A DNA stretch of 64,000 nt from Bispira polyomma (Eukaryota), in contig OZ287748.1 of the NCBI GenBank assembly GCA_965649765.1, positions 84,382,001-84,446,000 on the forward strand, in the 5' to 3' direction. How positions within the stretch are numbered: position 1 is the stretch's first letter; each line of letters starts with the position of its first letter. A program made the position numbers and the translations under genes. This document shows positions 1,527 to 63,431 of this stretch, one piece after another. Under the pieces are notes generated by a model. The model ran no database searches and was not told where the DNA came from. It worked only from the letters and a program-made list of their open reading frames with translations.

Positions 1527-1890
1527 TTTTAGTATTAACCAAAATATGCAGCTTCTCTTTCTGGTGTAATTTTGCTATCGGCAAACTGTAACTTGTGATG
1601 GACCAGCAAAGTAGGAATTGGAGTTTTGACTGCTTTCTTTACTCGATCAGCAGTAGAGTAAATTGTATCTTTGTCCTTTAACAGTATTTATATTATAATG
1701 TCCAGACTACAAATTTATATGGTATCATTTTAACTAAAATTGCAAGTACAATGTATGAGTATAAATTGTACAAAATCCGAGGTATTAGGCTAATAAATTT
1801 TTTTCAATTTAATATTGTTTAGTAATTAATGATTTTATTATTTCAGGAAGAAGTGACCCATAATAAGCCTTAATAACAAAATGACTGAAT

Positions 1891-31400: not shown

Positions 31401-34400
31401 ATCAGCCATTGGGTCTCAGAATATGAAGTCAGCCATCAATCAGCTGTCCATTATTAACCGATTGAATTTGATTGAGCTATAACAAATTCCTAATGAGAAA
31501 ACTCAGTGATAAGCACTTTTATACCCCCAGCTAGGGTCATGTGACCTTTAAGAAAGTCAAAGATCAAATCCAAGTATCTGTAAAATTGCTGCAGTGCCAG
31601 GGAACCAGACATGAAACAAATAAGCACCCTTTTCAAGAGACGCTGAATATTAGATGTAGGACTTGAGCCCTATTTGATGTGGGACCTGAGTCCTATTTGA
31701 TGTAGGACCCGATCCTTATTAGATGTAAGACCCGAGCCCTATTTGATGTAGGACATGAACCCTATTTAATGTAGGACCTGAGCCCTATTTGATGTAGGAC
31801 CTGAGCCCTATTTGATGTAGGACATGAGCCCTATTTGATGTAGGACATGGGACCTTTTTAATGTAGCACCTGAGCCCTATTTGATGTAGGACATGAGACC
31901 TATTTAATGTAGGACCTGAGCCCTATTTGATGTAGAACCTGAGCTCTATTTGATGTAGGACCTGAGCCCTATTTGATATGGGACCTGAGCCCTATTTGAT
32001 GTGGGACCTGAGCCCTATTTGATGTAGGACCTGAGCTCTATTTGATGTAGGACCTGAGCTCTATTTGATGTAGGACCTGAGCTCTATTTGATGTAGGACC
32101 TGAGCTCTATTTGATGTAGGACCTGAGCCCTATTTGATATGGGACCTGAGCTCTATTTGATGTGGGACCTGAGCCATATTTGATGTAGGACCTGAGCTCT
32201 ATTTGATGAAAGACCTGAGCTCTATTTGATGTGGGACCTGAGCTCTATTTGATGTGGGACCTGAGCTCTATTTGATGTGGGACCTGAGCCATATTTGATG
32301 TAGGACCTGAGCTCTATTTGATGAAAGACCTGAGCTCTATTTGATGTGGGACCTGAGCTCTATTTGATGTGGGACCTGAGCCCTATTTGATGTAAGACCT
32401 GAGCCCTATTTGATGTGGGACCTGAGCCCTATTTGATGTAGAACCTGAGCTCTATTTGATGTAGGACCTGAGCTCTATTTGATGTGGGACCCGAGCCGTA
32501 TTTGATGTAGGACCTGAGCCCTATTTGGTGTAGGACCTGAGCCCTATTTGATGTGGGACCTGAGCCCTATTTGATGTAGGACCTGAGCTCTATTTGATGT
32601 AGGACATGAGCCCTATTTAATGTAGGACCTGAGCCCTATTTGATGTAGGACCTGAGCCCTATTTGATGTAGGACATGAGCCCTATTTGATGTAGGACATG
32701 GGACCTTTTTAATGTAGCACCTGAGCCCTATTTGATGTAGGACATGAGACCTATTTAATGTAGGACCTGAGCCCTATTTGATGTAGAACCTGAGCTCTAT
32801 TTGATGTAGGACCTGAGCCCTATTTGATATGGGACCTGAGCCCTATTTGATGTAGGACCTGAGCCCTATTTGATGTAGGACCTGAGCTCTATTTGATGTA
32901 GGACCTGAGCTCTATTTGATGTAGGACCTGAGCCCTATTTGATATGGGACCTGAGCTCTATTTGATGTGGGACCTGAGCCATATTTGATGTAGGACCTGA
33001 GCTCTATTTGATGCAAGACCTGAGCTCTATTTGATGTGGGACCTGAGCTCTATTTGATGTGGGACCTGAGCCCTATTTGATGTAAGACCTGAGCCCTATT
33101 TGATGTGGGACCTGAGCCCTATTTGATGTAGAACCTGAGCTCTATTTGATGTAGGACCTGAGCTCTATTTGATGTGGGACCCGAGCCGTATTTGATGTAG
33201 GACCTGAGCCCTATTTGATGTAGGACCTGAGCCCTATTTGATGTGGGACCTGAGCCCTATTTGATGTAGGACCTGAGCTCTATTTGATGTAGGACCTGAG
33301 CTCTATTTGATGTAGGACCTGAGCCCTATTTTATGTAGGACTTAAGCCCTATTTGATGTAGGACCTGAGCCCTATTTGATGTAGGACCTGAGCCCTATTT
33401 GATGTAGGACCTGAGCCCTATTTGATGTAGGACTTAACCCCTATTTGATGTAGGACCTGAGCTCTATTGGTGTACGACATACGAGAATAAGAGGTTTGTG
33501 TCTATTTATAAAGGATCACACACCATGATGGTTGCTGTTGCAGTTCCACTCTCTCCTCCCCAGCATTCACCTATGTTTGGACACTTAGCCTCTTCACATA
33601 CCTAATAAAACAATAGAAAACCTTCCATGATTCTGTAAGAAATTTTCACTAACAACACACACATGCCATTTCATGACAGCCAAAAATAAAATCTGGAGAT
33701 ACATGCCAGTTCATGACAGCCAAAAATAAAATCTGGAGTTACTAGGCAAAGCTTTCAGGCTTTTGTTTTTCCATTGGTTACCGTTATTACTATCGAGTAA
33801 GAGTGTACAGTAGATGCTCTGTAACTAGAACCAGTTTAAGTAGAACCAATATTAGGCTCCCAACATTCAAAACTACTAGTTTTAACTTAGGCCACAAGAA
33901 GTTCCCCATAAAAGTAGGACCATATAGTGTATATTGAACATTTAACTGATGCAGAATTTACTGCACAAATAGAAGTACATGCAATGCCATGCATACATTT
34001 TGATAAAATACAAAGACATCTTCAACTTGGGAGAATTGATCTTGGCATTAGTTTTACCATTACGCTATGCTTTATAATAATACAATACATATTAAAGAGG
34101 ATACTAGTAAATGAAACATGGATTAAAGAAAACAAACAAATTGCATGTGAATGCTGAAAGATAATGCCTTACATTATAATTAGAGTGACAAACATGATTT
34201 AAAAGACTTACAAAGAGTGAAAACATCCTTAGAAATTAAACACTAAAGAAAACGTTAAAACTCACTGTGTGTAAATTTAGAGATCTCAGCGATTCTGTTA
34301 ATTTGTTGAAATTTTTCCCCATTGGAATTTCTTTCTTTAACCATGGTGGAAGTGCTAATCTAAATAAACAAGATAAACTCCATTACAATAAAAAACAAGA

Positions 34401-39663: not shown

Positions 39664-40637
39664 TTGTATCCACCGATCCGCTGGATACTTTGGTTGAGCG
39701 TTCCAAGATTTTTTGCTGGTTTAGTGTTGGAGATTTTTGCTGTTAACACTCTCAGCGGAAAACTAGACCAGCTAGCTTTACCAAATTTACAGGATATCTT
39801 CATTGGGAGGTAAGCTTCTCTACGACTAAAATTAACCTCATTCTAAAAAACAAGATCGCTGCCATCGGCATTTCTTTGAAAATTATCCACCTTTTTAGAG
39901 AGATTTTCATCGTTAACACTCTCAGCGGAAAACTAGACCGGCTCTCGTAACTAGAAGGTTAAATCTCTTCATAGGTGATATGTATAACAGATGTATATGT
40001 CCACTACAAGCATGCAGACATTTGACCTCAAAGCTCTCCATTCAAGGTTATCCACAGTGCCACAGTGGGCATACAGTCAGTCAAGGTTCTGCACTGAAAC
40101 CAGCGGCCCACAGTAAGGAACTACCATCTTTCCCACATAGGCATCGACGGGATCCAACAGGTTTGGCATGTGAAGCCTACCTATATGAAATCATGGGCTG
40201 GAAATCTTCTGATGTGGTCAGGTTTGACCTTTGGCCCCTCATTCAAAGTCAAACAAGGTATCCAAACTTAAAAGTGCTTATAACTTGCTTATTACCTAAA
40301 GGTTTGCATTGTGAAACCAACTTATAGGTAATCATGAGCTGGAAATCTTGTGATGTGATCAGATTTGACCTTGGGCCCCTCCATCAAGGTCAGACAAGGG
40401 TAAATAAATTTAAAATGCTTGTAACTCACTTATTATTGGTCCTACAGTTTTGAGATGTAAAACCAACCTAGAGGAAATCATGGGCTGGGAGTTTTCTGAT
40501 GTAGTTAGGTTTTACCTTGGATCACTCCTTCAAGGTCAGACGAGGGTAGCCATAGCTTAGGTGCTTCCTACTTAGGGTGCTCTGTCTTTCTGGTGGATAC
40601 AAATATGTATCGGTTCTCCGATGCTCTAGGTCTAGTT
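39664..40637 (+). mobile_element. HINE-like element, copy 3, with an internal SINE fragment
   Basis: Same head and 3' hairpin/CTAGTT end, about 3 core units. Antisense SINE piece at ~40067-40152. Confidence 0.65.
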
Positions 40638-43860: not shown

Positions 43861-46800
43861 AGTCCCACTGTAAACTGTAAAGCTATGGTCGCATTCATAT
43901 GGCATTACAGTAAAAGTGACTTGAGATATCAACAGTGATTTGTATGTTATAAACCTCCCGTCAAAGATTAAGCAATTTCTACACTTTACTGTAAATATGG
44001 AAATTGAAAAAAAAAATTAATGATTTTAAAAGGGTTTGGATATTTCAATTGCCTGCTAATGACCTTGTATGTATTGTCTTAAGGTCAAATGATTTTATGT
44101 TTAAAGAAAGGTCCATCAGATCTGTATCATAGTGTTAGTTATTTTTAAAACAACGTCTAAAAGTCATGAATTTTGACCAATGTTGAGCTCTAAATCATCG
44201 CGAGATTAAGCCTCAATGTCAGATTTATATAGCTATTCTCTACATCACCAAATACAGTCACACACCAAATGTATTTAAATCTATTACTTTCAGAGAGGGA
44301 AGGATGTCATTACTCTGCCAGTGGTGAATGAACCACCACATTAAAACCAGAGTATGCCCTGATTTTCATCTTAGGATACAATACAATACTGTGGCCAATC
44401 TGTGGCCAACCCCGAAGATACAAACATCATTATTGATAAAGCACTAAAGATATGGGATACTTTTTTAAACATATGTTTCGGAGAGCATGTAGATCTACTT
44501 GGGTCCATTGCTGCAGTTCTGCTTTAATTCGGTCAAAATGATGATTTTTCTGTTGAATAAGCATATATAGAACGTGGATGATGTGTTCCATATCCAAAAT
44601 ACAACAATAAAACATGTTGAATCAATATTTACTTATTTTAGTTAAAATGAGGACGCCTTTCACCTGGAAATATATATATGTTCTGGCCTTTAATAATTGA
44701 TAATTAAACAGAACATTTAACCATTATATCTCCTCCATAGAAACAATTATAGTTTAATAATTTAGTTATGGAAAGTAACATTAAGCATTTTGTAAAGAGA
44801 ACTCACCAGGAGAACTTGTGAGCACATTAATTGTTCACAGTGAATACTGTATCAGATATACAAATATGTCATAATTCGCATGCATACGTCTTCTTAAACA
44901 GTATTTCCGCTTAACAGAGTAAATGTTAAAGAAAATGCCCTAAAAATTCGGGATTATAGATAATAATTGTAATTGTAATTTGACTTTTATAGCGCTTAAT
45001 CTCCCTTTAACAAAGGGGACTCTAAGGTGCAACAGCACAAAAAGACAGTAATCCAATGTCAATATCCAGGGACAGAAAAAGGGTCAAGCATCACAGAGAA
45101 CGTCCGGAGTGATTAGGATAAGAAAAATAAAAATTTAAAAAAAAAATATAAAAAATAAAGAAAATAAGCTATACAGAGTTCTAGACTGTATTAGAAAAAT
45201 TACATATAAAAAAATTATATGTAAACCCGAGCCCCACTGTATTAACTCAGTGCCAAATTTCCTCTTTGCTTAACCTAGGCCTGCAATCAAATTTCTGTAA
45301 GATCTTGCATACCACAAGCACCTGTCTGTAAAGACCTCTCATGCCAACTTCTTTGTCCGTTTTTGGTTTGTTTTAAAGTTTTGGACAAATATTTTTTACA
45401 AGTTTGGCTTTATCTAGCTCAATATACAAATCTCTAGCATTGATAAAATGAAATTATATTTGCACTCTATGTAACTAATGTTTGCCAGGCTCTGTGTTAA
45501 TCTTAAAACTTTAGATATTTTTTACAGTCATTGTAAGAGTCAATATGTGAACCAAGAAATATCTTGCCACGTCAACTAAGTGACTTGATTTGTAACCTTT
45601 TATCTGTTGATGATGATCAGAGTTTTACAAGTGTCTCCTCCATTGTGTTATATAACATAAATACAAAAAGTACACATAACAGGCAATACCTTATCTGTGT
45701 AAATACCACTTACTGTTCTTGAATGTTACAACATGAGAATGATATTCAAATTAACCGAGTTTAAAACCAACATTTTCGTTTTATTTTTCAATTAATAAAA
45801 TATTTACAAAATAGTACTACGTATAGATAATAATAACTGGTCCAGAAATACTACAATGACTGTCATTTTTAATATAAAATTGTGACATATGATCTAGACA
45901 AAATAAGCTATAACTATATGTGTAATTGGTAATTTTGCCGTGATCTATTATTACTTATATTGATGTTGCTTGTTTCACAAAGTAGTAAACCTTATCTTTC
46001 ATATTTTATTTACATTGTGCATGTGTCAGTCAGTAATGCATTGTATGCAAATTATACAGATATGATAAACTTTAACATAAACAATGGACAGCTGATGTCA
46101 GTCATCTGGCATGCAGTGACAGACATATTTATATATGTACATGTACATGCATGTAATTATATTTCATTCAGTTTGGAATAACAAAGTTCAGTAGATCTTT
46201 TTTAGGAATTGGATATTTATTGACAGGTACAGACTTTCACTTATCAAAGTATGATAGTTTAATTTTTAAGCTAGAGTAAAAGTACTACTTTCATAGCCTT
46301 AATAATATTTTCTGATTTGTTTTTCCTTTTGCTGGCAAAATCACCAGAATTAATTTCCAATGTAATCCTAAACGTATACGCAATTACCATTATTGTAAGA
46401 GTAAACACTTACTTCCTATTACCTTGGAAGGGTAGATCTTATACAAGGAAACACATTTTTCTAGTTTGTAATCAGTTAACGCAGAAGTAAGTGAATAAAA
46501 ATTTATGCACTGTCAACATGAGCAATGACAAGACTAAACGCAAGTGTTTTTAATTGACTGCTGCATATGATTTATGTTACATGTTTTAGTGTAACTTAAC
46601 TGATTTCAATGGTATTGTTAAAGGTGTACATAACTTGTCCATTAAAACACCTACAAAACTACTTGTAAATACTATTTCCCTAGAATGTCCACACTATTAT
46701 GTAGTCCAAAACTTTGTTTCTTAAATTTTATGAATGACTTATCTTTACAAATTCAAACTGTCATAAACTACAGGATACTTTAGTGACATTAAATAAGTAA

Positions 46801-47327: not shown

Positions 47328-50300
47328 ATGGATGCCATTAACATGGATGGTTATGAAGCACTTGGGTGTCTACATGACATGTTTAGAGAACAAGTGAAGA
47401 AAACACCTAAGAAAACAGCAGTGGTAGCAGATGACGGGAGACAACTGACCTTTCAGGTGACGTATCTATATAATATTAATACACACAAGTGTGTTTAAGG
47501 GGTTGTCAGCATTGTAGGCAACCGTTTTTGGTATTGATGGAAACCTTAGGCTATACAACCAATTAATCTGATGTTATTTTCTAAACTTAGACTTCACAAA
47601 CAATATAAAAACATTTTTGCTCGTAAAACTCACCATTTTTGACTGACTGCTGCTACTGGTAATGTCAAAGCCAACATCATAATTGACGTGTCCATCACAG
47701 CCAACATAATAATTGGTGTGTTTATCAAATCAGCTTTCCCTCTCTGTTTGGCTCGGGATGGTAATAATTTTATGATATAAGCATTTGTAAAGCACCAAAA
47801 TTGATAAAACATCCTCAAAGGCAGTGATTCTCCAGATAAGTTTAGTCCATTAAAAGAAGAAATTAGTCTCAGAAAGCACTTGTTTTGGGAGGGTAGGCAA
47901 GCCTGAAAAGGGAGGTCTTCAATTGAGTACTAAAACTGAAGCCACAACAGCAAAGACATATCATCCAATCTGCATATTGGGATGCAAAACGGAGACTGAC
48001 AACCTGTTGGCATTTACTGGGCCACTAGTCCAAATAGATGAAGATAAATGGAAGTTGGGGTGGATCAAGATTGATGGCTTAAAACACCAAGGCATATTAT
48101 AGTTTAGAAGTATATGATGCTCTATCAGTAATTAGTGAAACTTATTTAGGTATGATGGTACACTGCTAAGTCGATCCAATTGATATTGATAGATAGTACA
48201 ACAGAAAGTATTTTCACTCTTTGAAGCTAATGCTAAATTAGCTAAAGTTGTTGTTCCATTTATTATTTTTTTCCAACCAAGGAGGTTATGTTTTTACAAA
48301 TGTCTGTTGGTTGGTCAGTTGGTTTATCACACTTTAATTAAATTTGGTGGGATGGGATATACCATAAGATATTGTATGGTATCTTCTTCTTCCTTTATTA
48401 AAGTTACTGTATAATGTGTAAATTAAAGTTCTGATATCATCCATTACCTGGTGAGAAAGTTAAAAAGAGTTTGCAAATTGTAAAAGCCAGTGTTTTTTGA
48501 CAAAAAATGTTAAACAAAATGCGCTTTGTAAAAGTATTAACTCATATCTTTTTAAGAAAGACACAAAATTCACTAACCGGAATTCTCTGGTTGACTATAA
48601 TGATGGTTTTTGCAGAAAACCAAACTCTTATATAAATGGTTATAAATGTTATAATCGAGGTCCACATGTTTGTATAAATGTTTCCAGGAACTGGATGATG
48701 CGACGGAGCAGTTAAGCCAGTACCTGCGTGTGTTGGGAGTCAAACCCGACCATATAGTGGGCATATATATGGAGAGATGTATTGAGTTCACCATAGCTTA
48801 TATAGCGATACTCAAAGCTGGTATAACTTGTAGTATTGTGTGTACAGTCAAACCCATCTAAGTAGAACTCTGTGAAGTCAGTTTCCCCATTGATATTGAA
48901 GTAATTATGTAGTCCTGCTTTGACCTATGCGTCTGAAATTTACCCTCTTTGGTGGAAATTGTATTTGAGTAGAATTATTTATTGTGGCTTCTAATAAGTT
49001 TGACTTGAAGGGGTTGAACTGTACATGTATAGTCAAACACTTTGAAGTAGAAAGTAGTCATATATAATATATGAAGATAGTCAAACTTAAGCTATAAATG
49101 TAGGAGGAGCTTTGTTTGCAGCTCTCGTAGCCGATGGGAGTTTACTTATAAAAATAAAGGGAGAGCTAGCTGAGTGAAATATATTTAAGAGGGGAGAATT
49201 CTCTCAGTATTGATTCTAGAGAAAGGTGATTCTTGTTGTCCCTTTGTGTTAGATTATTGACTTATGTAACACAGTAGAACCTCTATTATCCAAACTTCTA
49301 TTATCAGAATAATCACTAATTTCCAAGACACTGTTATAGTGTGGTTTCTTGGTACATTTTGTGTTTCAAGACTTCCACACTATTGTTTGGGTGTTGTGTT
49401 GTGGCTCAGGCTTTGGGGTGGTGTAGCCTTGTCAGATTGACTAAGAAGATACAGCTTTATTTTCCATGTTTATTTGTTATAACGTTTACAATTAGTTATC
49501 CCCTGAGTGTTTCTGGCTGAGCTCCTATTTCATTTATTGCCAGCTAGAGCTGAACTGTAACTATAAGTCTAACTGTTTATTAGGCATAGCTTTCTGCACT
49601 AAACTTAATACTTCTATTTATAGAACTCAGAACTCATCTCTATCATCTCTGTGAAACTATCTTTGCACCTCTGCTTTTCCACTCTTCAACTCTGCAACTC
49701 TGCTACACAATTCAATCAGGCCATTTATATACTTGAACAAAAGGATATGATTCATACCTTTAATACATTGAGAACTTTCTTAAAATAACCTTATCAAGAC
49801 TCATCTAAAGTTTTCACAAGTTATAAAGTTATACAGTTAAGCAATACTAAACCACTAAAACATACACACTACTAGAGAAAGGCCAATCCTCCTACACAAA
49901 CAGTTTTCTTGAAAATGATCATCCAGAACTTTGTCTTTACCTAGAAATGTGCCATTATCAGAGGAGGATGTGGATCTGTGGTTACCTTAAACATAACATT
50001 TTTAACCACCATATGAAATAAATATTGATGTGATTGAACTCAACTTAAAGGGTCATTCTATTACTGTAATACAGTGGCACATGTTTATTTCTTTTTAACT
50101 GTGTTTCTATGATTGTAAAAGTTTGTACAAGTGACAATCTATTAACTCCCTACAAATCTGATAACTTTTAACATATGAATTTTTCCTTAATATTAATAAC
50201 TGATATATTAACTTTCCTCCTGAACAATAAGGTACATGCACATATAATGTGTGATACACAAAGAAATGATAATGAATAGATATTTATATGAAATGTTAAA

Positions 50301-53300
50301 TATGAACAAATTACTTGTGTGAACTTTACTAACACAACGTTACCCATTTATAATGTAATTAAATGTGATATAAAAGTTACCGCTGATTATGTTTATATTT
50401 ACACCAGAAGTTCTTTATTCTGTATGTTTGTATCCAAGACATTGTGATAATGAATATTGTAAAATATAGCTCTACAACACTTCCCTCCGCTGTGAAAAGG
50501 TTGGTCCCCAACCTTGCTTGACGGAAAGACAAGGTATAGTTAACATGAAGATGAACATGATTACACATTAGTTACTACAGTAACTTTTGATAAGCCGTAC
50601 TAATTAATGAACATCGAAAATGTAGCAAAACATAGACATACACATTATACATACAGCAGTTAGAATACATAATTAGAGTTACAATTAATAGATACATGTT
50701 TTTCCCATGTAGTGAAGATTACAAAATGAAATATACTGCAAATATAACTACATACAAATATATACATAAGTGGATCAGTTCCATTACATTATCTACAGTG
50801 CCAACTGCTAGTAAAACATGACTAACCATGATTGTAAGTGGTTACTATGATAATATAACACTTATTTTACGTTAATATCAAACACTGAATATTTTTCTGT
50901 TAGAACTTCTGTTTGTTGTGTTAGTTTGTTTGTTGTAGGAGCAATCAAGAGCTATGGGTTGTGAAGTTGGCTTAAGACTTTGTTCTCTCCTGTTTGAGAC
51001 TGTTGACTGCTGTCAGTCCATTTGTTACCTCATCACACAATCATGTTCAAAAGTGTGATTGGAACACTCTGCTTGTGCCTATAACACAGGTATATGCAGT
51101 ATTTATGGGAGAAGCATGTGTGTCTCCAATACTGCTGACGTGTGTTAATCTGGCCTGTTCGTTTAAAGAGGACACCATAGTTTGCTCTGGTGACCGTTGT
51201 TGGTTGTTGGACTGACACAGACTGTTAAGGTTGCTATCATCATTAGTGCTGACCACCATTGGTTGGCCAAATTACAGAATTGGTAATTTAATAAGTTACC
51301 TGGATAGAACTTAGCTATCTTTATTGGATGCAGTGAACTGTGTGCCACATAGAACTAAGTAGAACGTATAAAACATCTAAATTTTGCGCACATAATTTAG
51401 AATTTGGAAGAAAAAAAAAGAAATCTGCAGAGTTTTATATGCATTGTGTGTTCATTGTAAGATATAGCTTTTAAGAAAAATCTTTAAGGTTTCAATTCAG
51501 TAGCCATATGATCACACATGATAGCTGTGCTTGCTTCTGTTAAAGCTTACACTGTAATGATAATGTTTAGTCTTGCCATGTTTCTACTAGTGTGTTGCTA
51601 ATGATGCTGTGTTTGTATTTTACGTTTTGTGGCTCTACCAGAATGAGTTTTCTTAATATGAAACTCTTCCTTTATGCAACTTGGAATGGAATCTTCGGAC
51701 ACTTGTCTCTTTCCAGACTTGCCTGTTATTTTCACATAGTACCATCTTTTGCCTTCATGCTTGGCAGCTGTTTTGTAAATCTTTTCAATCTTAAGTGCAG
51801 GGTTTACCTGAGAATGAGGTTGAGACTCCTCTTGGGTCACAGGTTGACTATCTTGTGTCTCTGATGAAGTGTTGGACATTTGGGAGGATTGAGTAAGTGG
51901 TGTGGGAGCAGTATTTTCCCTTTCCTTACAGGGTTTGAGTTTATTGGCATGGACAGCACCTCGCCATGCGTTTTGAGTAGCAGTGTTTCTTAGCAGGTAG
52001 GTGTGATTATCAAAGACTTTTGCGATGTAGAAAGGACCTAAGAACTTATCGCTAAGTTTTGGTGACAAACGTTTCTTTCGTTTGTTATTTTTTAGAAGCA
52101 CATGATCCCCAAGTTTGAATGTAGGATGTGAAACTTTTTTATCATAATAATTTTTTGATGACTGTTGAGCTGCTGCAATGTTTTCCTTTGCTAGTTCAGA
52201 GAATATCTGAACTTTTGTATTAAGTTTGTGATAGTGTTCCTCTCTACCTACAGGTGACTCAGTGGTAGCTAAAAAATTGAGATCTATAGGCAGCTGACAT
52301 TCCTTACCAAACATTAACATGTATGGAGTGCACTTAGTTGACTGAGTAGCTGGTGTTCTTCTGTATGCACACATGATACTTGGTAGGATTTCATGCCAGT
52401 TGTTTTGAAACTTATTTATATATGCTCTCATTCCTTGTAGGATATAGCTATTCATTCTTTCTGCTGAGGAATTAGTTTGGGGATGATATGGTGTTGTGTT
52501 AATCTTTTTAATCTGAAAGAGCTTGCACAAGTATTCCAACAAACGTAACATGAACTGCTGACCTTTGTCAGTAAGGATAGAGGATGGAGCGCCATATCTA
52601 CAAATGATTTCATTGTATAGAATGGTGGCAACATTAGCTGCTGTGGCCTCCTTTGTAAAAGAATCTACTACAAGCAAGATGTATTTGTGTCCCTCGGTTG
52701 TAGTAGGCAGAGGGCCTAGAAAGTCTAGGTGGAGTCTGTCAAACCTAGCTTTTGTGGGAATCGGTTGTAATGGTGTAACAGAGGCATGGTACTGTCTTTT
52801 TATATGTTGACATGTTTCACATGATTCTACATATTCTTTGACATCTTTGGCCATTGTATTCCACCAGTACTTTTGTTTCAGTCTGTCGTATGTTCGTTCA
52901 AAACCTTGGTGACAACCTATTGTACTGTCATGATATGCCTCAAGTAGCTCTAGTGGGACTGTTTTGGGAATCAGTAACTGTTTAATGAGTCTATCTTCTC
53001 TATGACCCTGATGGAGCATATCCTCTATAATAGAGTAAACCTCCATGTAGCTTATAATCAGGAGCTGTACGTGTTACTTTCTTAACTACCTTTTCATCAT
53101 CTGGTAAAGTTCCTTCTTCAATAAACTGTATGATTGGCCCTAAATCCGGATCTTGTTTTTGTTGATCTGTTAAACTTACTTCTGAATTACTGGTGAGATC
53201 CGTGAACAATGAAGTAGGGCTTATATCTTCATATTCATGAATGGCCGACACATACTTTTGTAAAACTGTCACTTTGGTTGGTACTGATTTTACTTCTTGC

Positions 53301-56300
53301 TCAACTGTGTAACTTAAGTTATACTCAACCATAGGAGCTTTATCGGTGGTAAGTGTAGAAACTAAGGGGAAGGTGTTTGGCTCTGGTTCTACAGTAACAT
53401 CAGACTTTTCAGGATAAGTGCGTCAGGATAATGCATCAGCATTACCGTGTACTTTACCAGGTTTGTGAATAACAGTAAACTGGAATCCTTGTAGGTAGTC
53501 ATACCATCTTTGTCGACGGCCAACATGCTGTTTTGCCAAGTCTAAGCTTTTCAGGGCAGAATGATCACTGTACACAGTAAAGTGTTTGCCTGATAAATAA
53601 TGCCTGTAGTACCGGATGCCTTCAACTAAGCCAAGCCCCTCTTTATCAGTAATTCCCCATTTCCTTTCACAATTATTCAGTGAACGGCCACCATAAGCAA
53701 TCACACATTCTCTACCTGTATCATCTTCTTGTCCAAGGATGTACCCAATGGCAAGGTCAGATGCATCAGTGTAGAGTATGAACTCTCTGTCAAAATCAGG
53801 GAATTTTAAGATAGGTTCTTGTATCAACTTACTTTTCAGCTGTTCAAATGAACTTTGACACTGGTCTGTCCAGAGAAACTTTACATCTTTTTTCAACAGT
53901 CTGTTTAATGGTGTAGCTATATGGGCAAAGTCTTCCACAAACCTGCGATAATAATTACAAAGTCCTAAAAAACTTTGTAATTGAACCTTAGTTTTTGGTA
54001 CAGGAAAGGTTTTTACTGCACTGACTTTTTAAGGATCGGGTTCAATTCCCTTCTCACTTATCAGATGCCCTAGATATGGAGCTTTTGGGAGGGCAAATAG
54101 GCACTTTGGGGGTTGTAGTTTGAGATTGGCTTTCTCTAGGCAATCAGATACCTCAGTTAGATGTTGCAGATGTTGAGAAAAACTACTACTAAATACAATT
54201 ATATCATCAATATAAACTAAGACATACTTCCAGTTTATTCCACAGAGTACTTCACTCATGACCATGGAAAAGGCCATAGGAGCATTTTTCAAACCAAAAG
54301 GAAGCCTTTTAAACTGGTAAACACCATTTCTGGTCACAAAAGCTGTCTTGTGTTTAGTTTCCGGGTCAAGTGGAATCTGGTGAAAGCTACTTGCCAAATC
54401 TAGGACAGAAAATAGTGTGGGTTTTGACATAGCAACAGTGTCTACCACTTCCGAAAATCTAGGAATTTGGAAGTACAGATAGTCAGTGATTTTGTTCAGC
54501 TTTCTGTAATCCACCGCAAATCTGAAATCCCCATTTTTCTTTTTAACTAGTACCACTGGGCTTGACCATGGTGAAGTACAAGGTTCTATTAGATCACCTT
54601 TAAGCATTGAGTCTACCAATTTGTCAGTGACTTCTGCGGTTTGAGGTGTTTGTTTGTAAGGAAAGCTTCTGACAGGTGAAGCATTACCTGTATGAACAGT
54701 ATGATGGTACACATTAGTACCAGTTAATTCTGTGACATCATTGGCAAAGACATGTCGGTATTTACCCAGAAAGGTTAACAGTTGTAGTTTTTGTTCTTCA
54801 TGAAGTGCACTGTTGTCTAGGGATATACCTAAGCTTGTAGCTTCCTTAATGAGATGCTCATTACTGACATATTGATGTTCTGTTTGAGATTGACTGATAC
54901 TTCGGACTTATGCTGTCTGAGGTGTATTGTTGTTTGTACCTGATATTATGTCACATTCTTGGATTGGTGTTTGTAATGCGACATGTGTATTTTGAGGTAT
55001 TTCAATGTCATGATCAGTTGGATTGAGAACTCTGTAACAAGATGTACCCTTAGACATTGAAAGTAAACATTTTGCACCAGCGATGTAATGTTGAGACATT
55101 AACATTTTGACAGGTTCAGCCAAACAGGAAACAGTTTTTCTCTTGTTATGTCTGCACATAATAGTTATAATTTTCTCAGTTCTAGGTGGAATTAGTTCAG
55201 TAGTAACTGTTTTTGCAAGGAAACTTTTGTTGTTGTGAGATGCTTGAATGGTACTGACAGAGTTGCCAGTGTCTATTGTTAGTGTCTCCTTGTCAAATGA
55301 CAGAATTGCTTTATACTTTTGTAAAAAGTCTTTCCCTAAGATACACTGGTGTGCTAATCCTTCAACAATATGATATGTATGTGTTACTGACTCACTTCCT
55401 ACTGTTATAGGAAAACTAGCTAGACCACTTGTTTTCAGTGTACCACCCCCTGCATGTGTTAGTTTAAGAGATGATACCTGAACAGGGTATGTTTTGTTGA
55501 GCCCTAGCTGAGTAAAAACCTTATAGTTCATGCAACATACATCAGCACCTGTATCTATTAGAGCTTTTACCTCAACACCATTTATGAGTACACTAACTGA
55601 GCATTTGCCTTGATTTATACCGGTCATGACCCTATTTGACATAATTTGAGTATCTATGTTGGCCTTAGAGAGGTTCTTTTGCTTGTTACTTTGAAAACCA
55701 CTGTCACTACTCGATACTCTTACTGTTCCAATGTTTGTCTTTACCTTCGAATGATTGATACCTTTTTGCCTATCCAGGTCATTAGACAAGTTACATTTAC
55801 TGTACAGGATAGGCCCGCACCCCTATTGTGAACTTTTACACATTTTCCCGAAATGGTTACTTTTTTGGCACTTATAGCATGTTTTACCTCTAGCAGGGCA
55901 CTCAGATAAAGTAGAATTGAACTTACCCCCACAGAATGTGCATTGTCTGTAATGAGTGGTGTCATGTCTCTGTTGGTGGTTGCCTTTTGTTCTCCATTGT
56001 CTGTTTGGTGTGGATCCATGGGATACACTAAAATGCTGTGGAGTCTGCGACACATTTTGTGTTACCGCTGTGAGGCTGCTGGCCAGGTCCTTCAGTGTTG
56101 CACATAATTCCACTACCTCTGGGGTGGCTGGAAAGCTGGCAGTGGCTGTGGAATTGTCCTTTGGCAGCGTGTCACGGCTATGCGCACATCTTGTAGTGTG
56201 CTTGGATTCTGTGTGGCCACAAACCCCTGGATGTCTGGATCCAATGCAGCCACCACAAAAGGCACAATCTGAGTGGCCTCCATTTTACATTGGTGGTACA

Positions 56301-59300
56301 AATTCACAATATGATCTATGAAGTGCAAAGGATTTTCCCCCGGCTGCTATCGCATGTTTTTGAGGAGCTCCATCGCCTTGAAGGAATCAGCTGTTGTTGA
56401 AAAGCGCTGCAGGAAAGCCACCTTGAAGTTGGCCATGCTTGCCTTGGCTGTCGCTTCCAAGCCGGAGAACCAGTAATTGGCTGTATCATCCAGGTAGAGG
56501 CTAATCTCCTTCAGGAGATTCTCATCGGTGGTGTTATTTTTAGTAGCAAAGGCCTTCAATTTTGTGAGGAATATCTCGGGGTTTGAACTGCAAGAGTCAA
56601 AGACTGGGGCTCTGTTGTTCGCCATGTTGTCTGTCTTCGGTGATGTTGATGTTGCTGTTGTTGTGCCTGACGCCTTGTTACTGCTAGGATCATTTAGGTC
56701 AGCTTGAAAGTGACCAACCCATCTCCACCAAACTGTTATAGTGTGGTTTCTTGGTACATTTTGTGTTTCAAGACTTCCACACTATTGTTAGGGTGTTGTG
56801 TTGTGGCTCAGGCTTTGGGGTGGTGTAGCCTTGTCAGATTGACTAAGAAGATACAGTTTTATTTTCCATGTTTATTTGTTATAACATTTACAATTAGTTA
56901 TCCCCTGAGTGTTTCTGGCTGAGCTCCTTTTTCATTTATTGCCAGCTAGAGCTGAACTGTAACTATAAGTCTAACTGTTTATTAGGCATAGCTTTCTACA
57001 CTAAACTTAATACTTCTATTTGTAGAACTCAGAACTCATCTCTATCATCTCTGTGAAACTATCTTTGCACCTCTGCTTTTCCACTCTTCAACTCTGCAAC
57101 TCTGCTACACAATTCAATCAGGCCATTTATATACTTGAACAAAAGGATATGATTCATACCTTTAATACATTGAGAACTTTCTTAAAATAACCTTATCAAG
57201 ACTCATCTAAAGTTTTCACAAGTTATAAAGTTAAGCAATACTAAACCACTAAAACATACACACTACTAGAGAAAGGCCAATCCTCCTACACAAACAGTTT
57301 TCTTGGAAATGATCATCCAGAACTTTGTCTTTACCTAGAAATGTGCCATTATCAGAGGAGGATGTGGATCTGTGGTTACCTTAAACATAACATTTTTAAC
57401 CACCATATGAAATAAATATTGATGTGATTGAACTCAACTTAAAGGGTCATTCTATTGCTATAATACAGTGGCACATGTTTATTTCTTTTTAACTGTGTTT
57501 CTATGATTGTAAAAGTTTGTACAAGTGACAATTTATTAACTCCCTACAAATCTGATAACTTTTAACATATGAATTTTTCCTTAATATTAATAACTGATAT
57601 ATTAATTTTCATCCTGAACAATAAGGTACATGCACATATAGTGTGTGATACACAAAGAAATGATAATGAATAGATATTTATATGAAATGTTAAATATGAA
57701 CAAATTACTTGTGTGAACTTTACTAACACAACGTTACCCATTTATAATGTAATTAAATGTGATATAAAAGTTACCGCTGATTATGTTTATATTTACACCA
57801 GAAGTTCTTTATTTTGCATGTTTGTATCCAAGACATTGTGATAATGAATATTGTAAAATATAGCTCTACAACAACACTTTCCTAAATTTACAGTTCCTAC
57901 TCTTAATGCTTTTTCCATTTTCTTAATCCCCTAGTATTCCATTTTTAACAAACTGTTTCTTTCCTAATATTTTTTGGATGATAGAGGGCAGCCTATATGT
58001 CAACATATCTTTACATCTTATCACATCTATCATTATCATCTATCATTAGGAGCATCCTACATGCCTATTGATGTCAGTTACCCCACTCCTCTGTTGGAAG
58101 ATATCTTCGCAGATGCCAAGCCTATTGCCATTTGTGCTGAGCAGTCAGTTCTCCCTAATTTAAAAGGTATTGTATAACAAACTTGCTGACCTCTCTAGCA
58201 TATTATTAATTTTGTTAATATTATATGTATACTAGACCCTCTGTAACTAGAACCAATAGAAGTCAAATTTCTCTTTAAGTTAGACAGAAGTAGAACCACA
58301 TCCTGTGAACATTAGACATTTGACTTAATTATATGCAGAGTCTATTAAAAAAGAAAATAATAAAATAGCCATATATTGATAAAACTATTATAAGAGAAAT
58401 TGGAGTTTACAGAATTATCAGCTGCAACACTAATTAACATTGGTGAGGCCAAAATGATGCAACTTTTAAAAAATGTAGATGACCTGGGTTCAATACCAGC
58501 ATTGCAGGGGCGACCAGTTACAGGCAGACACATAATGGCTTGAATTACAACTGACTTAATATAGTAGTCCTCAGTTATTGGTTCATAACCCTAGTTGGCT
58601 AAAAAACCTTTGTGGTGTTGCTAAATAGTCAGCCTCAAGCCCCTCTCTTCAGTAATGGCCCATTCACATTGCAACAAATCAGTATATACAAATTCGTTGG
58701 TTGGTGTAAATTAACAGAAGCATTCTCACTGCAAAGAATCAGGATAATGATCTAGAAATTTGATAGGGATCAAATATTGCACAAATCTTTTTTTTAATTT
58801 CCACACGAATTGTTGAGGGAGATAAACAAAAGCATGTGGAAATAAACAACATCATCTAAACATAAGTAAAAAGTGACACATCTGCGCAGGATTTGGCTGA
58901 ATATTTCGTCTGTGTATGTACTGCAAATGTATAAAATTAGGTTTCATGTGTATTGCTGAATTCTTTAATAAATACCGACTCATTGCAATGTGAATGGGCC
59001 ATAAGGGGAATGAATGATAGTTAACTGATGCTGGCTGGCTGCTGGATGTCAAGAAAAGGTTAATTAGTGTTTTGAACACCAGATAAAGGTAGATAAGTGC
59101 ACTGATTATAAATTTGAATATAATACAGTTAAGAATTCTTTCCATAATAAAATTCCTAACCACAAACCTGCACTTTTGTATGTAACAGACAGAAAGAATG
59201 TGATTGTGATGAACAAATCCTGGCAGCAAAGAATACAGAAGGAGTTAGAAGTGGCTGATTTGTGTGTTGAACCTCCTTCAGTGACATTAGACAACCTGGC

Positions 59301-62300
59301 CTATACTGTGTACTCCTCTGGTACTACAGGGAAACCTAAAGGTCAGTGCAATGAGTACACTTACAATTCACAGATATTAGGTGCTGTATGTTATATCTGG
59401 AATAATTATTTGTATTTTTTTTAGATCAATGTTCTATTTGTATAAGTGAAGCAATACATATTCCAACAAAATGTTGTAAAGCCAGTCAAGTTGCATCTGT
59501 AGACATCAATATGTGCTCTACAAAAATGACAAGGAAACAAAGCTAAATATCACACACCTACATGAATAGAATAGGAGAAAAAAATCAAATCAAAACGAAA
59601 GTTTTTTTTCCTGTTTTGTTTTTTAGTTAACTCTAAGAATCTGTGGTTGCATTTCCAAACACTCTCATTATAAAATTCTTATAATTACTTTGAGCCAATC
59701 AGATTCCTTGAAACAGTTTTGTAAACCAAACAAATTGCTCAGACTCAGAAAATTTTATCACTGTGAATAATTGACCAGACAGTTGTGTGTTTTGTACTGT
59801 TATGATTATGAGATTTGCACACTTTTCAGGTATCCAGTGCCCACACCGTGGTGCAGTGTTTTCCTACTCTCACAGACACCAAGCCTTCCCTTACCAGGAG
59901 GATGACAGAGAGGCCTGTAACGTCTTCTTTGTGTGGGAGATGCTCAGGCCTTTACTTAAAGGTAAGTGTCAGTCAAACCCAGGCCAAAGTACAGTTGTAT
60001 TCAAATCTATACTCAGTTATCTATCTTTATCCTGGTATCCAAAGACCAAAGCTCTCATTAACCTAAAGCCAACCAATAACTGTCAATTCCCCTTACTTAA
60101 GAGGGTCTCCATTTTAGGTTTTCACTCAAGCCACTATACATGACTTTCCTAGTTTTAGGACTGAAACCAGGTCATCCAAGTGTTGTTTACTTGGCTACAA
60201 TGGTTGCTAATTATATTGCATCCAATGTTATGGTCATTAATTTTTATTGCAATATTGCAAACACACAGTTCCTTTAAATTTACTGAGACTCTTATTCTAT
60301 TGTAGGAATCACCCTGTATATTATTCCTGACACTGTGATTTATGATGCCAGAAAACTAGTGGATTATATCAAAAAGAACCAAATCACCCGTATTCTGTTC
60401 ACACCATCCCTCCTGGAAGCGGTTCTGGATGCTGAGGTGGATTCAGTACATTTCTCAGACAGCATCAAGTCACTCAGGTAAGTTCTGCACCAAGGCACAA
60501 GGTCTAGGTCTGTAGATAAATAAATATTAGCTATTATGAGCACTATTCCATAACCTTTTTTAATCAGAATTGCATTGTCAGTCCTTAGAATCCACATTAT
60601 GTAGATAAGGTAACTGGTAGTCTGATTGAATGTATCTTAAATACTCATTGGCATGATTATTTCGGTTTTATCTCACTAAGTTTTTTTGGTCAAATAAGTT
60701 GTACAGCTACTATATTTGATTCACTAAAACATGACAAAGTTTTACAAAGATGTAGGTTTGTTGGTAAGTGAGTAATGATTACATATTGGTTTCAATAGCC
60801 ATAATAAGACCAGTAATATAATATTTGATTTATATTAACTATTATTTGTTTATAAAAATCAAGGAATATAAATGAGATGGTTTGGATCCATTTAATGTAC
60901 AGTTATAAATACAGTTATGGAAATGTAATGCTAATTGCTGATCAATTTCCTATACAAATCCTAGTTTGTCGCCTCTTTTAGCATTCACAATTATTACAAT
61001 ATAAGTTAAATTAATTTTATCTTTTTTTATTTATAGACTTAAAAAATTAAAAAAAATTATAATATTCACCCCATTTGAGTGTTTACTAATAAGATATTGG
61101 GGCAGACCGAGAACAGATAAATGTTGTCAGACCCTTGTTTAGATAGCTGTTTTGTGTGGTGTTTGTAGAACAGTGCTATTTTGTGGTGAAGTGGTTACAA
61201 CAGGACTACTAGACAGGTGTATTAAGGCGTTCCCCCATGTCCAGTTTGTCAACCTCTACAGTGTCTCTGAGTCACATGACATAGCCTGTATGGATCTGTC
61301 ACAGTGGTATTCTACTCTAAAGGTAAACAGCTTACTTTTTCTAAATTCTAGAAACATGTATCAATCTCTGATTATAAGTACAGTTAAACCCCTTTTAAGT
61401 CGAAACTCATGGATCAGGGGAAAATACCTCTACTTGAGCAGGATTTCCACTTAACAGAGTAGATATTTAACAGAATTTCTCCACATAAACGGGAAATTGA
61501 CTTAAAAGAGTTCCACTTAAAGTGGTTTGACCGTTTGACCTGCAATTACAGCAGACTCTCGACTGTCCAACCTCCCTTTATCAAAAATTCAGATTTTCTG
61601 AAACCCAACTAATATCCCCCATTTTTGTTTTGCATGTTTCTTATGTCTATTAATTGGCTTGGGTAGGTGATAATCAAGGTTTTGATTAAAATATTCACTT
61701 AATTGGGTTCAATAGTAGATTTGGAAGACAGACCACCACATTCAACAAGTACCCCTTTTCTGTTAAAACGTATGTCTCCTCTATTCTAAATGGTTTAATT
61801 GTGTCATAAAAAGCTTTTCTGTATGTAATCAAATTATCCTCATTAATAATATAGTTGTTTTTTTTTAACAGGTGATTAGTAACAAAAAAAAAACATTTTT
61901 CAAATTTAGCTTAAGCTTTGGCTCTGACATTTCTGAAACAGCTCATTGCATATAAAAAAATATTTTGGCACTGAATCCATAACAACAAATTAACATACAC
62001 ATGTACTTGTGCCAGCCATTTCAATATCATCAGAATGGAACCGGTTGTCATATAATTATAATGAATCAAAATGAGAATAAAGAAAACTGCAATAATTCTC
62101 TATTTTGCATTACAAAATTTAGCTTAAAATTAACAATTATTTGTACAGCTTTTTCATGTTTGTTTTTTTAGGACATAAAGGCTCTGAAGTTTTGTCCTGT
62201 GGGGAAAGTTTTACCAGGAGTACATGTAGTGATACTGGATGATGACCTCAAATCACAACCTCTGGGTGTACCAGGAGAGGTACAAACAAAAAGTTTGAAC

Positions 62301-63431
62301 TCAGACACAAAATGGCAGTGGAGATATCATAAAATTAGGGTCTTATTGATTGATCTCACATGAGTATGGTGTAAACTAAAATTTTGAGTTGATGTGTAAT
62401 TTCAAATTTCATTAGTCAATATTGTGATTATGGTAAAATGACTTATTTTGTAGATTGCATGATCTTACATGAATACAAACTCAACCTGTGAGGTTTATGT
62501 GTGAAGTAAAATTGCATTCAGTCATACAAAAAGTAAAGTTTAAATGAAGCGCCTCATCAAATAAATAATCTTATGGATTATATTGATCACAGAATAAATG
62601 TTGTCTGTGGAAAAGCTATGCGAAACAAATATTATCAGCTCAAATCCAAGAATTAAGTTTTTATCTTATTTCTTTAAATTTTATTTAGAGATGATTGTAC
62701 GCGTCTTTTATCATGAGGTGCTGTCGTCAACATATTTACATATAAATGTATAAAATGTAAACAATTTCCAATAATAATCAGAAACAACAGTGAATACATA
62801 TATTTTAACATAAGTTTTACATGTATCTTTTTGTTGCAATTACATATTTTGATAGTATGTCTTTTTTTTTCCAGTTTGTTTTTGAATTATTCCTCATTGT
62901 AGAGAAATAGATTTAGAACTTCTTAAATGATTTCCACTTATTTCATCATTTAAAATAATAATAGAATATTTCTTAGGCAAAAAAATTAAAGATAATATCA
63001 TGATTCCTATACTAGATATATGTTGGTGGACCAACCCTCGCCAAGGGTTACCTCAACAGACCAGAGTTAAATGCAACAAGATTCATCCAGCGGCCAGACT
63101 CAGTAGCTGAGAAAGCAGGTCCACGTCTTTATAAAACTGGTGACTGGGGTTACATGCTGAGCGACGGGAGCTTTGAGATCTGTGGACGCTGTGATTCGAT
63201 GGTGAAAGTGCGTGGCTACTCTATTGAGGTACAGGCTGTAGAGGCTGCTCTGTTAGAACTGGCAGTAGTCAATACCTGTGTGGTGTTAGTCAGTGGTGAT
63301 GAAGGAGAAGACAAGTTTTTGGTGGCTTACATTGTACCCGAGGGCAAGACCACCAAGAAAGAGGTCAGAGCTCTGCTCAAAAGGAGGCTCCCCTTCTATA
63401 TGGTGCCTTCGTATTTTCTCTTCTTAAATAA
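47328..63431 (+). CDS. NRPS-like adenylation-domain protein, probably ATRR/glycine betaine reductase-like; 3' end outside window
   Basis: Exons 47328-47456, 48688-48820, 58050-58166, 59189-59341, 59830-59961, 60306-60477, 61169-61322, 62172-62279, 63016-63431 join in frame. A-domain core motifs: A1 LTFQEL, A2 LKAGASYMPID, A3 LAYTVYSSGTTGKPKG, A4 ACNVFFVWE, A5 NLYSVSE, A6 GEIYVGGPTLAKGYL, A7 YKTGD, A8 GRCDSMVKVRGYSIE, A9 LPFYMVP. The A-domain call is firm. The ATRR subfamily call is inferred from recalled motifs. Confidence 0.85.
48845..49021. mobile_element. pogo/Tigger-like MITE (TA TSD)
   Basis: TA|CAGTCAAACCC..AAGT ... ACTTGAAGGGGTTGAACTG|TA. Confidence 0.65.
49332..50479 (-). repeat. 3' LTR (~1148 bp)
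   Basis: Direct repeat of 56734-57873. Preceded on - by the purine tract GCGGAGGGAAG (50480-50490). Confidence 0.95.
51598..55822 (-). pseudogene. pol: Gypsy pol (protease, RT, RNase H, integrase) with premature stops and one frameshift
   Basis: Protease ALIDTGAD. RT SPWSSPVVLV..DYRKLN..LPFGLKNAP..YIDD. RNase H LYTDASD..DHSAL..NADALS. Integrase H..GCHQG..CETCQ, HLDFLGPL, TDKG, SAERMN and GPF motif. Confidence 0.92.
55823..56625 (-). pseudogene. gag: Gypsy gag (one internal stop, one frameshift) with C-terminal zinc knuckles
   Basis: ORF pieces 56347-56625, 56113-56328 and 55823-56113. Double knuckle CTFCGG..CPARGKTCYKCQKSNHFGKMC. Confidence 0.8.
56720..56730 (-). other. Primer binding site complementary to tRNA-Ala 3' end
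   Basis: TGGTGGAGATG on -, 3 nt inside the 5' LTR. Complementary to CATCTCCACCA, the 3' end of metazoan tRNA-Ala. Confidence 0.7.
56734..57873 (-). repeat. 5' LTR (~1140 bp)
   Basis: Near-identical to 49332-50479: about 16 substitutions plus one 8-bp indel by eye. Adjacent to the PBS. Confidence 0.95.

What the first reader, a model, noticed from the sequence alone, without database searches (positions are those of the whole stretch)
47328..63431. Intron-rich animal NRPS-like gene with a non-amino-acid (betaine-type) adenylation pocket
Seen: nine spliced exons give A-domain motifs A1-A9. A4 reads NVFFVWE where canonical NRPS A domains have FDxSVWE, so the Asp that binds the substrate alpha-amino group is replaced by Val and flanked by Phe/Phe/Trp. 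A5 is NLYSVSE rather than NxYGPTE. Known: fungal ATRR (A-T-R1-R2) reduces glycine betaine to choline using an aromatic cation-pi pocket, and from memory it carries an ACNVFF(I)WE motif. Ebony, AASDH and Lys2 keep an Asp here. Inference: this animal may run a betaine-to-choline reduction pathway (osmolyte recycling), which is little characterised in metazoans. The many canonical introns indicate long residence, not contamination.
Basis: partly seen in the sequence, partly recalled or inferred. Interest (0 to 1): 0.8.

Follow-up and report, generated by a model that had tools for sequence, protein, structure and literature searches.

The report
Invertebrate betaine-to-choline reductase (ATRR) gene
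This is the first half of an ordinary, ancient invertebrate gene of the known ATRR family, an enzyme that most likely turns the osmolyte glycine betaine back into choline; its binding pocket differs enough from the tested fungal enzyme that the exact substrate still needs an assay.

Summary
The nine exons are real: all introns are GT-AG and in phase, giving 504 codons with adenylation motifs A1-A9. The window ends before A10. An orthologue from another species (dN/dS 0.08) continues through A10, T, a thioester reductase and an SDR with their catalytic motifs, so A-T-R1-R2 (ATRR) is well supported. The gene is not unusual. Full-length relatives occur in annelids, molluscs, cnidarians, placozoans, echinoderms, tunicates, insects and nematodes. 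Some are already annotated 'glycine betaine reductase ATRR', invertebrate copies are noted in papers, and a nematode copy has been tested indirectly. Three introns are shared with Trichoplax. Two refinements: (1) the pocket keeps F201 and W204, but W270 is Leu and E304 is Asp, as in the DMSP-activating BurA, so betaine is likely (about 0.7) but not shown; (2) fungal ATRR nests inside Actinomycetota, apart from the animal and protist clade (AU p=0.002), and split or fused copies exist in bacteria, often beside a BCCT transporter. Verdict: new member of a known kind.

The parts
47328..47456 (+). Exon 1, start codon and A1; nothing upstream of the A domain
   Evidence: aligns to residue 1 of homologues
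48688..48820 (+). Exon 2 (A1 end, A2)
49332..57873 (-). Ty3/Gypsy LTR retrotransposon in intron 2, antisense to the gene. LTRs at 49332-50479 and 56734-57873 (98.4% identical, TG...CA ends, 4-bp ACAC target duplication). gag zinc knuckle, protease, RT, RNase H and integrase, interrupted by stops and frameshifts; no env-like ORF
   Evidence: absent from the orthologue's intron 2
58050..58166 (+). Exon 3
59189..59341 (+). Exon 4 (A3 P-loop)
59830..59961 (+). Exon 5 (A4 ACNVFFVWE; pocket positions 235 V, 236 F = fungal F201, 239 W = fungal W204)
   Evidence: 43/43 residues identical in the orthologue
60306..60477 (+). Exon 6 (pocket position 278 L; Arg at 276 where the fungal enzyme has Glu)
61169..61322 (+). 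Exon 7 (299 L = fungal W270, 301 C, A5 NLYSVSE with 322 L, 330 D = fungal E304 and BurA D606, 331 I)
62172..62279 (+). Exon 8 (start of A6)
63016..63431 (+). Exon 9 (A6-A9); the gene continues past the window end

Best explanation
The window holds the 5' nine exons (the adenylation domain up to A9) of a vertically inherited invertebrate ATRR gene (A-T-R1-R2). Most likely mechanism: the A domain binds glycine betaine through a Phe/Trp cation-pi pocket plus an acidic residue (Asp330) and adenylates it with ATP; the betainoyl group is loaded on the phosphopantetheinylated T domain; R1 reduces the thioester with NADPH to betaine aldehyde; R2 (SDR) reduces that to choline, which feeds phosphatidylcholine synthesis and limits betaine build-up. 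Shown here: exon structure, purifying selection, family membership, pocket residues, and full architecture with catalytic motifs in an orthologue. Inferred: that this species' own downstream exons match the orthologue (about 0.93), the chemistry (from A. nidulans ATRR), and the substrate.
For: The orthologue on ENA contig ERZ22147071 ctg31009l has the same nine exons (dN/dS 0.077), then GKLD (A10 Lys), GG|HS (T Ser), TGATGFLG and YSQSK (R1), and TGASSGIG and YSGTK (R2). The best full-length relatives are A-T-R1-R2 proteins from many phyla, 60-66% identical over the separately searched exons. F201 and W204 are kept and position 330 is acidic. The window code V-F-W-L-L-C-L-D-I differs at two positions from the cyst-nematode code V-F-W-L-H-C-L-D-V; the ATRR of the related root-knot nematode rescued yeast from high betaine (PMC11050029). 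W270 is not fixed in the animal/protist clade: W in 60 of 101, at least 15 swaps on the tree. Bacterial relatives sit directly downstream of a BCCT betaine/carnitine/choline transporter in 12 loci. The family is kept in land insects, freshwater snails and filarial worms, which favours a universal substrate. Marine protists transcribe atrr in the region where labelled betaine was traced to choline (PMC9321204).
Against: No animal ATRR has been assayed in vitro in the papers found; the nematode evidence is a growth rescue plus RNAi. Five of ten code positions differ from the characterised fungal enzyme. Asp330 is the residue of the DMSP-activating BurA, while fungal ATRR has Glu and rejects DMSP and beta-alanine betaine. 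The fungal enzyme is not in the same clade. The downstream exons of this species lie outside the window. No synteny with the orthologue could be shown.
Confidence: 0.7

Rival explanations
1. Same A-T-R1-R2 chemistry, but the animal enzyme prefers, or also accepts, a different onium acid: DMSP, beta-alanine betaine, proline betaine, gamma-butyrobetaine or carnitine, reduced to the matching alcohol. The shorter Asp330 and the loss of W270 would make room for a longer or bulkier substrate.
For: Asp at 330 in 100 of 101 animal/protist sequences, against Glu in all 114 fungal sequences scored. BurA D606 occupies this position and BurA prefers DMSP. The BurA-like protein of L155 also shares Arg276 with animals. 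Animal Cys301 and Leu322 are nearly invariant and differ from fungi.
Against: Nematode MiATRR (cyst-nematode relatives carry the Asp type) relieves betaine toxicity in yeast, and its transcript rises with betaine and falls with choline in planta. DMSP is unlikely in aphids, cockroaches or filarial worms. The BurA-like A domain does not group with animals in the tree.
Confidence: 0.2
2. An R2-less paralogue (A-T-R1, stopping at the aldehyde) or a decaying duplicate, perhaps disturbed by the intronic retrotransposon.
For: Shorter models without R2 exist in Capitella, Owenia and others, and a fragment in Mytilus. A recent 8.5-kb Gypsy insertion lies in intron 2. The downstream exons were not seen.
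Against: The closest relative has an intact R2. All nine exons are open with canonical sites and dN/dS 0.077. The element is antisense and lies 0.5 kb and 0.18 kb from the splice sites. The short models may be truncated predictions.
Confidence: 0.06
3. Another animal NRPS-like enzyme (Ebony, AASDH/ACSF4, Lys2-like aminoadipate reductase, molluscan FmtATR) or a true peptide synthetase.
For: Exon 9 alone is more identical to canonical bacterial NRPS (about 50%) than to fungal ATRR (36%).
Against: Pocket exons 5-7 score 91, 65 and 70 bits on the animal ATRR profile against -3, 14 and 3 on canonical NRPS. There is no N-terminal C or formyltransferase domain. The closest full-length relative scores 422 on the Lys2 model against a cut-off of 1030. 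Exon 9 falls inside the animal ATRR clade (99).
Confidence: 0.02
4. Contamination or a recent horizontal transfer.
For: Bacterial relatives exist at 44-50% identity.
Against: Intron positions are shared with Capitella, Mytilus, an aphid and Trichoplax. The neighbours are spliced animal genes (SH3RF-like, lipoyl synthase), and GC content is uniform. Animal sequences form one clade (100/99).
Confidence: 0.02

Closest known systems
Nematode MiATRR (Meloidogyne incognita; PMC11050029) and the invertebrate ATRR-like proteins in NCBI (Haliotis rufescens, Nematostella vectensis)
   Same: Same animal clade, same A-T-R1-R2 layout, same A4 and A5 signatures; code differs at only two positions from cyst-nematode copies.
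   Different: Position 299 is Leu (His or Ile in plant-parasitic nematodes, Trp in about 60% of the clade) and 331 is Ile. Different host, a Gypsy element in intron 2, and one ancestral intron (431/0) is lost.
Fungal glycine betaine reductase ATRR (Aspergillus nidulans AN5318; Hai, Huang and Tang 2019, 10.1101/559534)
   Same: Domain order, short Asp-less A4 loop, F201 and W204, an acidic residue at 330, and homologous R1 and R2 (all ATRR-type R2 domains form one clade).
   Different: W270 to L, N to C at 301, C to L at 322, E304 to D; only 36-58% identity in most exons. Fungal copies nest inside Actinomycetota rather than next to animals (AU p=0.0018). A. nidulans itself was not retrieved; A. 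clavatus served as the numbered stand-in (offset +1).
BurA adenylation domain (Burkholderia; PMC7496086)
   Same: Same onium-acid A-domain family, Asp-less A4 loop, Asp at the 330 position.
   Different: Part of a TE-A-T-KS-AT-KR hybrid that extends DMSP to gonyol; it has no R1-R2, and it branches separately in the tree.
Molluscan FmtATR (PMC11869996), Lys2, Ebony, AASDH
   Same: Monomodular NRPS-like enzymes of eukaryotes; FmtATR and Lys2 have a thioester reductase.
   Different: FmtATR has an N-terminal formyltransferase and takes tyrosine. The Lys2 model cut-off is missed by a wide margin. None has the fused R2. Ebony and AASDH were not compared by sequence here.

Membership tests
ATRR (A-T-R1-R2 glycine betaine reductase family) | N-terminal stand-alone A domain with no C domain before it | tested here: met
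   Exon 1 aligns to residue 1 of homologues; no other hit upstream
ATRR (A-T-R1-R2 glycine betaine reductase family) | T, thioester reductase R1 and SDR R2 follow in one chain, with catalytic Ser and both Tyr | tested here: inconclusive
   Outside the window for this genome; fully met in the orthologue (about 88% identical over the nine exons)
ATRR (A-T-R1-R2 glycine betaine reductase family) | No Asp235; short hydrophobic A4 loop with F201 and W204 | tested here: met
   ACNVFFVWE against A. clavatus ACNVFFIWE
ATRR (A-T-R1-R2 glycine betaine reductase family) | Acidic residue at the E304 position | tested here: met
   Asp rather than Glu; Asp in 100 of 101 animal/protist copies
ATRR (A-T-R1-R2 glycine betaine reductase family) | Groups with ATRR-type A domains, apart from canonical NRPS | tested here: met
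   Exon 9 inside the animal ATRR clade; ATRR-type clade 100/100 against NRPS; exon-wise profile scores
ATRR (A-T-R1-R2 glycine betaine reductase family) | [quoted passage not shown] | not testable with these tools
   Needs an enzyme assay
Fungal ATRR subfamily (the biochemically characterised type) | Third cage aromatic W270 and code V-F-W-L-W-N-C/V-E-I/V-K | tested here: not met
   Window code V-F-W-L-L-C-L-D-I
Fungal ATRR subfamily (the biochemically characterised type) | One clade with the fungal sequences to the exclusion of bacteria | tested here: not met
   AU test rejects fungi + animals + protists as one clade, p=0.0018
BurA-type DMSP-loading NRPS-PKS | TE-A-T-KS-AT-KR architecture | tested here: not met
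   The gene starts at the A domain and the orthologue continues T-R1-R2
Lys2 aminoadipate reductase | TIGR03443 score above 1030 | tested here: not met
   The closest full-length relative P0084 scores 422
Ebony / AASDH | Ebony AANAT-like C-terminus, or AASDH PQQ repeats, after A-T | tested here: not met
   The orthologue has NAD_binding_4 and adh_short after PP-binding; these proteins were not in the tree

The most novel reading that the evidence does not exclude
The animal and protist ATRR clade is a branch separate from the fungal enzyme (which looks like a transfer from Actinomycetota), and its Asp330/Cys301/Leu322 pocket with a variable position 299 reduces a different or wider set of onium osmolytes (DMSP, beta-alanine betaine, carnitine-type acids). 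That would be an unrecognised onium-acid reduction pathway common to most invertebrates, with unreported bacterial counterparts in transporter operons.
Probability: 0.2. Interest if true: 0.65.

Novelty: new member of a known kind. Interest (0 to 1): 0.3.

Why it matters
This one gene adds little, because the family is known and widespread. What is useful is the wider picture. Most invertebrate phyla appear to keep an ancient enzyme that could run the choline-to-betaine pathway backwards, and none has been assayed in vitro in the papers found. That bears on osmolyte turnover and dietary choline needs in molluscs, corals and insects. The pocket differences give a concrete, cheap test (Asp against Glu at 330, Trp against aliphatic at 299). 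The side result that ATRR is not exclusive to eukaryotes, and that fungal copies nest in Actinomycetota, revises a published statement if it holds with wider sampling.

Tried and rejected
The spliced model was searched exon by exon, by reference only; the joined protein was not built or searched. A natural full-length relative (P0084, 66.5% identical over the exons) stood in for the A-domain trees, the PDB search and the structure prediction. The large representative-protein search was not used, because the family was settled without it. The PDB holds no ATRR-type structure by sequence or fold. The unaligned first prediction was not collected. The PNAS version and SI of Hai et al. were not held, so the fungal code comes from retrieved fungal proteins and the four residues named in the preprint. 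Genomic loci for Acropora and Ptychodera were not on record. Synteny with the orthologue was not found within 13 kb upstream. Searches for papers on betaine replacing choline in animals found nothing relevant. Regex-based pocket counts for bacteria at positions 299 and 301 are noisy and were not relied on. No tRNA genes in the window. The contig is not human: it has invertebrate-type genes at 34% GC. Unrelated toxin-annotated genes in outgroup locus L164 were left unread.
Full report
Observation. I read the region and defined nine exons between 47328 and 63431. All introns are GT-AG, the phases chain correctly, and the 1514 nt give about 504 codons without a stop. Motifs A1 to A9 are present in order. 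Pfam and NCBIfam recognise adenylation-domain pieces in exons 2, 4, 6, 7, 8 and 9. The gene runs off the window before A10. The window has no N and is not human.

Intron 2 (9.2 kb) holds a Ty3/Gypsy retrotransposon on the opposite strand. Its LTRs are at 49332-50479 and 56734-57873, 98.4% identical, with TG...CA ends and a 4-bp target duplication. It carries gag knuckle, protease, RT, RNase H and integrase domains, interrupted by stops and frameshifts. The orthologue's intron 2 is short and lacks it. It looks like a recent passenger.

Architecture. Exon 9 found a 95% identical fragment on a 1.1-Mb ENA contig. That contig is another species: its exons are 75-92% identical in DNA and its introns do not align. 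It has the same nine exons, with dN/dS 0.077 against the window. It continues with A10 (GKLD), a T domain (GG|HS), a thioester reductase (TGATGFLG, YSQSK) and a complete SDR (TGASSGIG, YSGTK). A-T-R1-R2 is thus shown for the orthologue and inferred for the window.

Family. A natural full-length relative from a JGI contig (L003 = P0084, 1293 aa) retrieved 1100 proteins at E<1e-100. The best 120 include annelids, nemerteans, molluscs, a brachiopod, hemichordates, echinoderms, tunicates, cnidarians, Trichoplax, a flatworm, an acoel, insects, nematodes and marine protists. Haliotis and Nematostella copies are named 'glycine betaine reductase ATRR' by NCBI. The window's exons are 60-66% identical to the best of these. 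Each exon scores best on the animal/protist profile, and exon 9 falls inside the animal clade, nearest P0084, which groups with annelids in the A-domain tree. The host is probably a lophotrochozoan, but this is not settled. Of nine intron positions, seven coincide exactly with Capitella, seven with Mytilus (plus one near match), six with an aphid and three with Trichoplax.

What is already published. Hai et al. characterised A. nidulans ATRR and wrote that atrr also occurs in several protists and invertebrates (10.1101/559534). Zhang et al. showed that Meloidogyne MiATRR lets yeast grow on high betaine and that knock-down harms parasitism, without an in vitro assay (PMC11050029). A 2025 paper mentions the molluscan glycine-betaine reductase homologue as known (PMC11869996). 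Marine protists transcribe atrr in the region where betaine is converted to choline (PMC9321204). An animal ATRR gene is therefore expected, though animal enzymology is thin.

Pocket. Fungal ATRRs were retrieved. In A. clavatus, F202, W205, W271 and E305 match the published F201, W204, W270 and E304 with an offset of one, which fixes the numbering. The window's code is V-F-W-L-L-C-L-D-I (the Lys lies outside the window); fungi mostly have V-F-W-L-W-N-C/V-E-I/V, and cyst nematodes V-F-W-L-H-C-L-D-V. Two cage aromatics and the acid are kept; W270 is Leu, also in the orthologue. Among 101 animal and protist sequences this position is Trp in 60 and changes at least 15 times on the tree, whereas F236, W239, C301 and D330 are nearly invariant. 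The Leu is therefore ordinary for the clade. The Asp at 330 matters more: BurA, which prefers DMSP, has Asp there (D606), while fungal ATRR has Glu and rejects DMSP and beta-alanine betaine. This keeps the substrate open. Against a specialised marine substrate stand the nematode result and the retention of the gene in land insects, freshwater snails and filarial worms. The A4 change is better described as a shortened loop than as Asp to Val.

Origin. Scans of bacterial genomes found many A-T-R1 proteins with the same A4 signature in Rubrobacteraceae, Desulfobacteraceae, SAR202 and others. In 16 actinomycete loci an SDR 63-72% identical to R2 lies directly downstream, and in 12 a BCCT transporter lies directly upstream. 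Fully fused A-T-R1-R2 occurs in an Actinomycetota MAG (L149) and in Mangrovihabitans. In A-domain trees rooted on canonical NRPS, animals and protists form one clade (98/96), while fungi nest within Actinomycetota next to Mangrovihabitans (100/100). The R2 tree also groups fungi with the actinomycetes. An AU test rejects a single eukaryote clade (p=0.0018). Caveats: limited sampling (ascomycetes only), GC-biased actinomycete rows, and the direction of transfer is inferred from nesting. The practical point is that the assayed fungal enzyme is a cousin, not the direct orthologue, of the animal gene.

Mechanism and verdict. Most likely (0.7): ATP-dependent adenylation of glycine betaine, loading on the T domain, NADPH reduction to betaine aldehyde by R1 and to choline by R2. 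The exons, selection, family and pocket residues are shown; the orthologue's architecture is shown; the chemistry and substrate are inferred from fungal and nematode work. Main rival (0.2): the same chemistry on another onium acid. It works like ATRR and belongs to the ATRR family in the broad sense, but it fails the tests for the fungal subfamily.

Noticed in passing
window 49332-57873 (-): Recent Ty3/Gypsy LTR retrotransposon in intron 2, LTRs 98.4% identical, coding region broken by stops and frameshifts.
   Followed up: yes
window about 23200-34400 (-): Spliced lipoyl synthase (LIAS) gene, head to head with the ATRR gene about 13 kb away; its first exons were not mapped.
   Followed up: partly
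window 1885-12925 (+): RING plus SH3 exons of an SH3RF/POSH-like E3 ligase.
   Followed up: partly
window 24530-26130, 31648-33468, 3965-4719, 8663-9537, 40152-40548: Tandem arrays: 64-bp x25 (99% alike) and 23-bp x79 inside LIAS introns, and a dispersed 141-147-bp repeat family also seen in the orthologue's locus.
   Followed up: no
window 46022-46081; L171 9271-9333: A 63-bp non-coding match (84%) upstream of exon 1 in both species; with the conserved AG just before the ATG it may mark a 5' untranslated exon.
   Followed up: no
L149 3936-7907; P0205; L160 6961-7776; L124 976-2745: Bacterial ATRR-type genes: fused A-T-R1-R2 in two actinomycetes, split A-T-R1 plus SDR in Rubrobacteraceae, often after a BCCT transporter. 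The original paper called atrr exclusive to eukaryotes. Fungal ATRR nests among these.
   Followed up: partly
L030-L082, L084, L091, L103, L126, L137, L143, L148: A second bacterial A-T-R1 group (Desulfobacteraceae, SAR202, marine metagenomes) with Asp330, unrelated SDR neighbours, and PfkB or methyltransferase genes nearby; function unknown.
   Followed up: partly
L155 3138-10328: BurA-like TE-A-T-KS-AT-KR hybrid in Mixta mediterraneensis with the onium-acid pocket.
   Followed up: partly
L170 11381-15457: Two long unannotated ORFs (575 and 648 aa) in a 12-kb intron of the orthologue's R2 region, probably a mobile element; no family hit.
   Followed up: no
P0171, P0180 (Capitella), P0145 (Owenia), P0006 (Mytilus): Shorter ATRR-like models without R2, either real paralogues or truncated predictions.
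   Followed up: no
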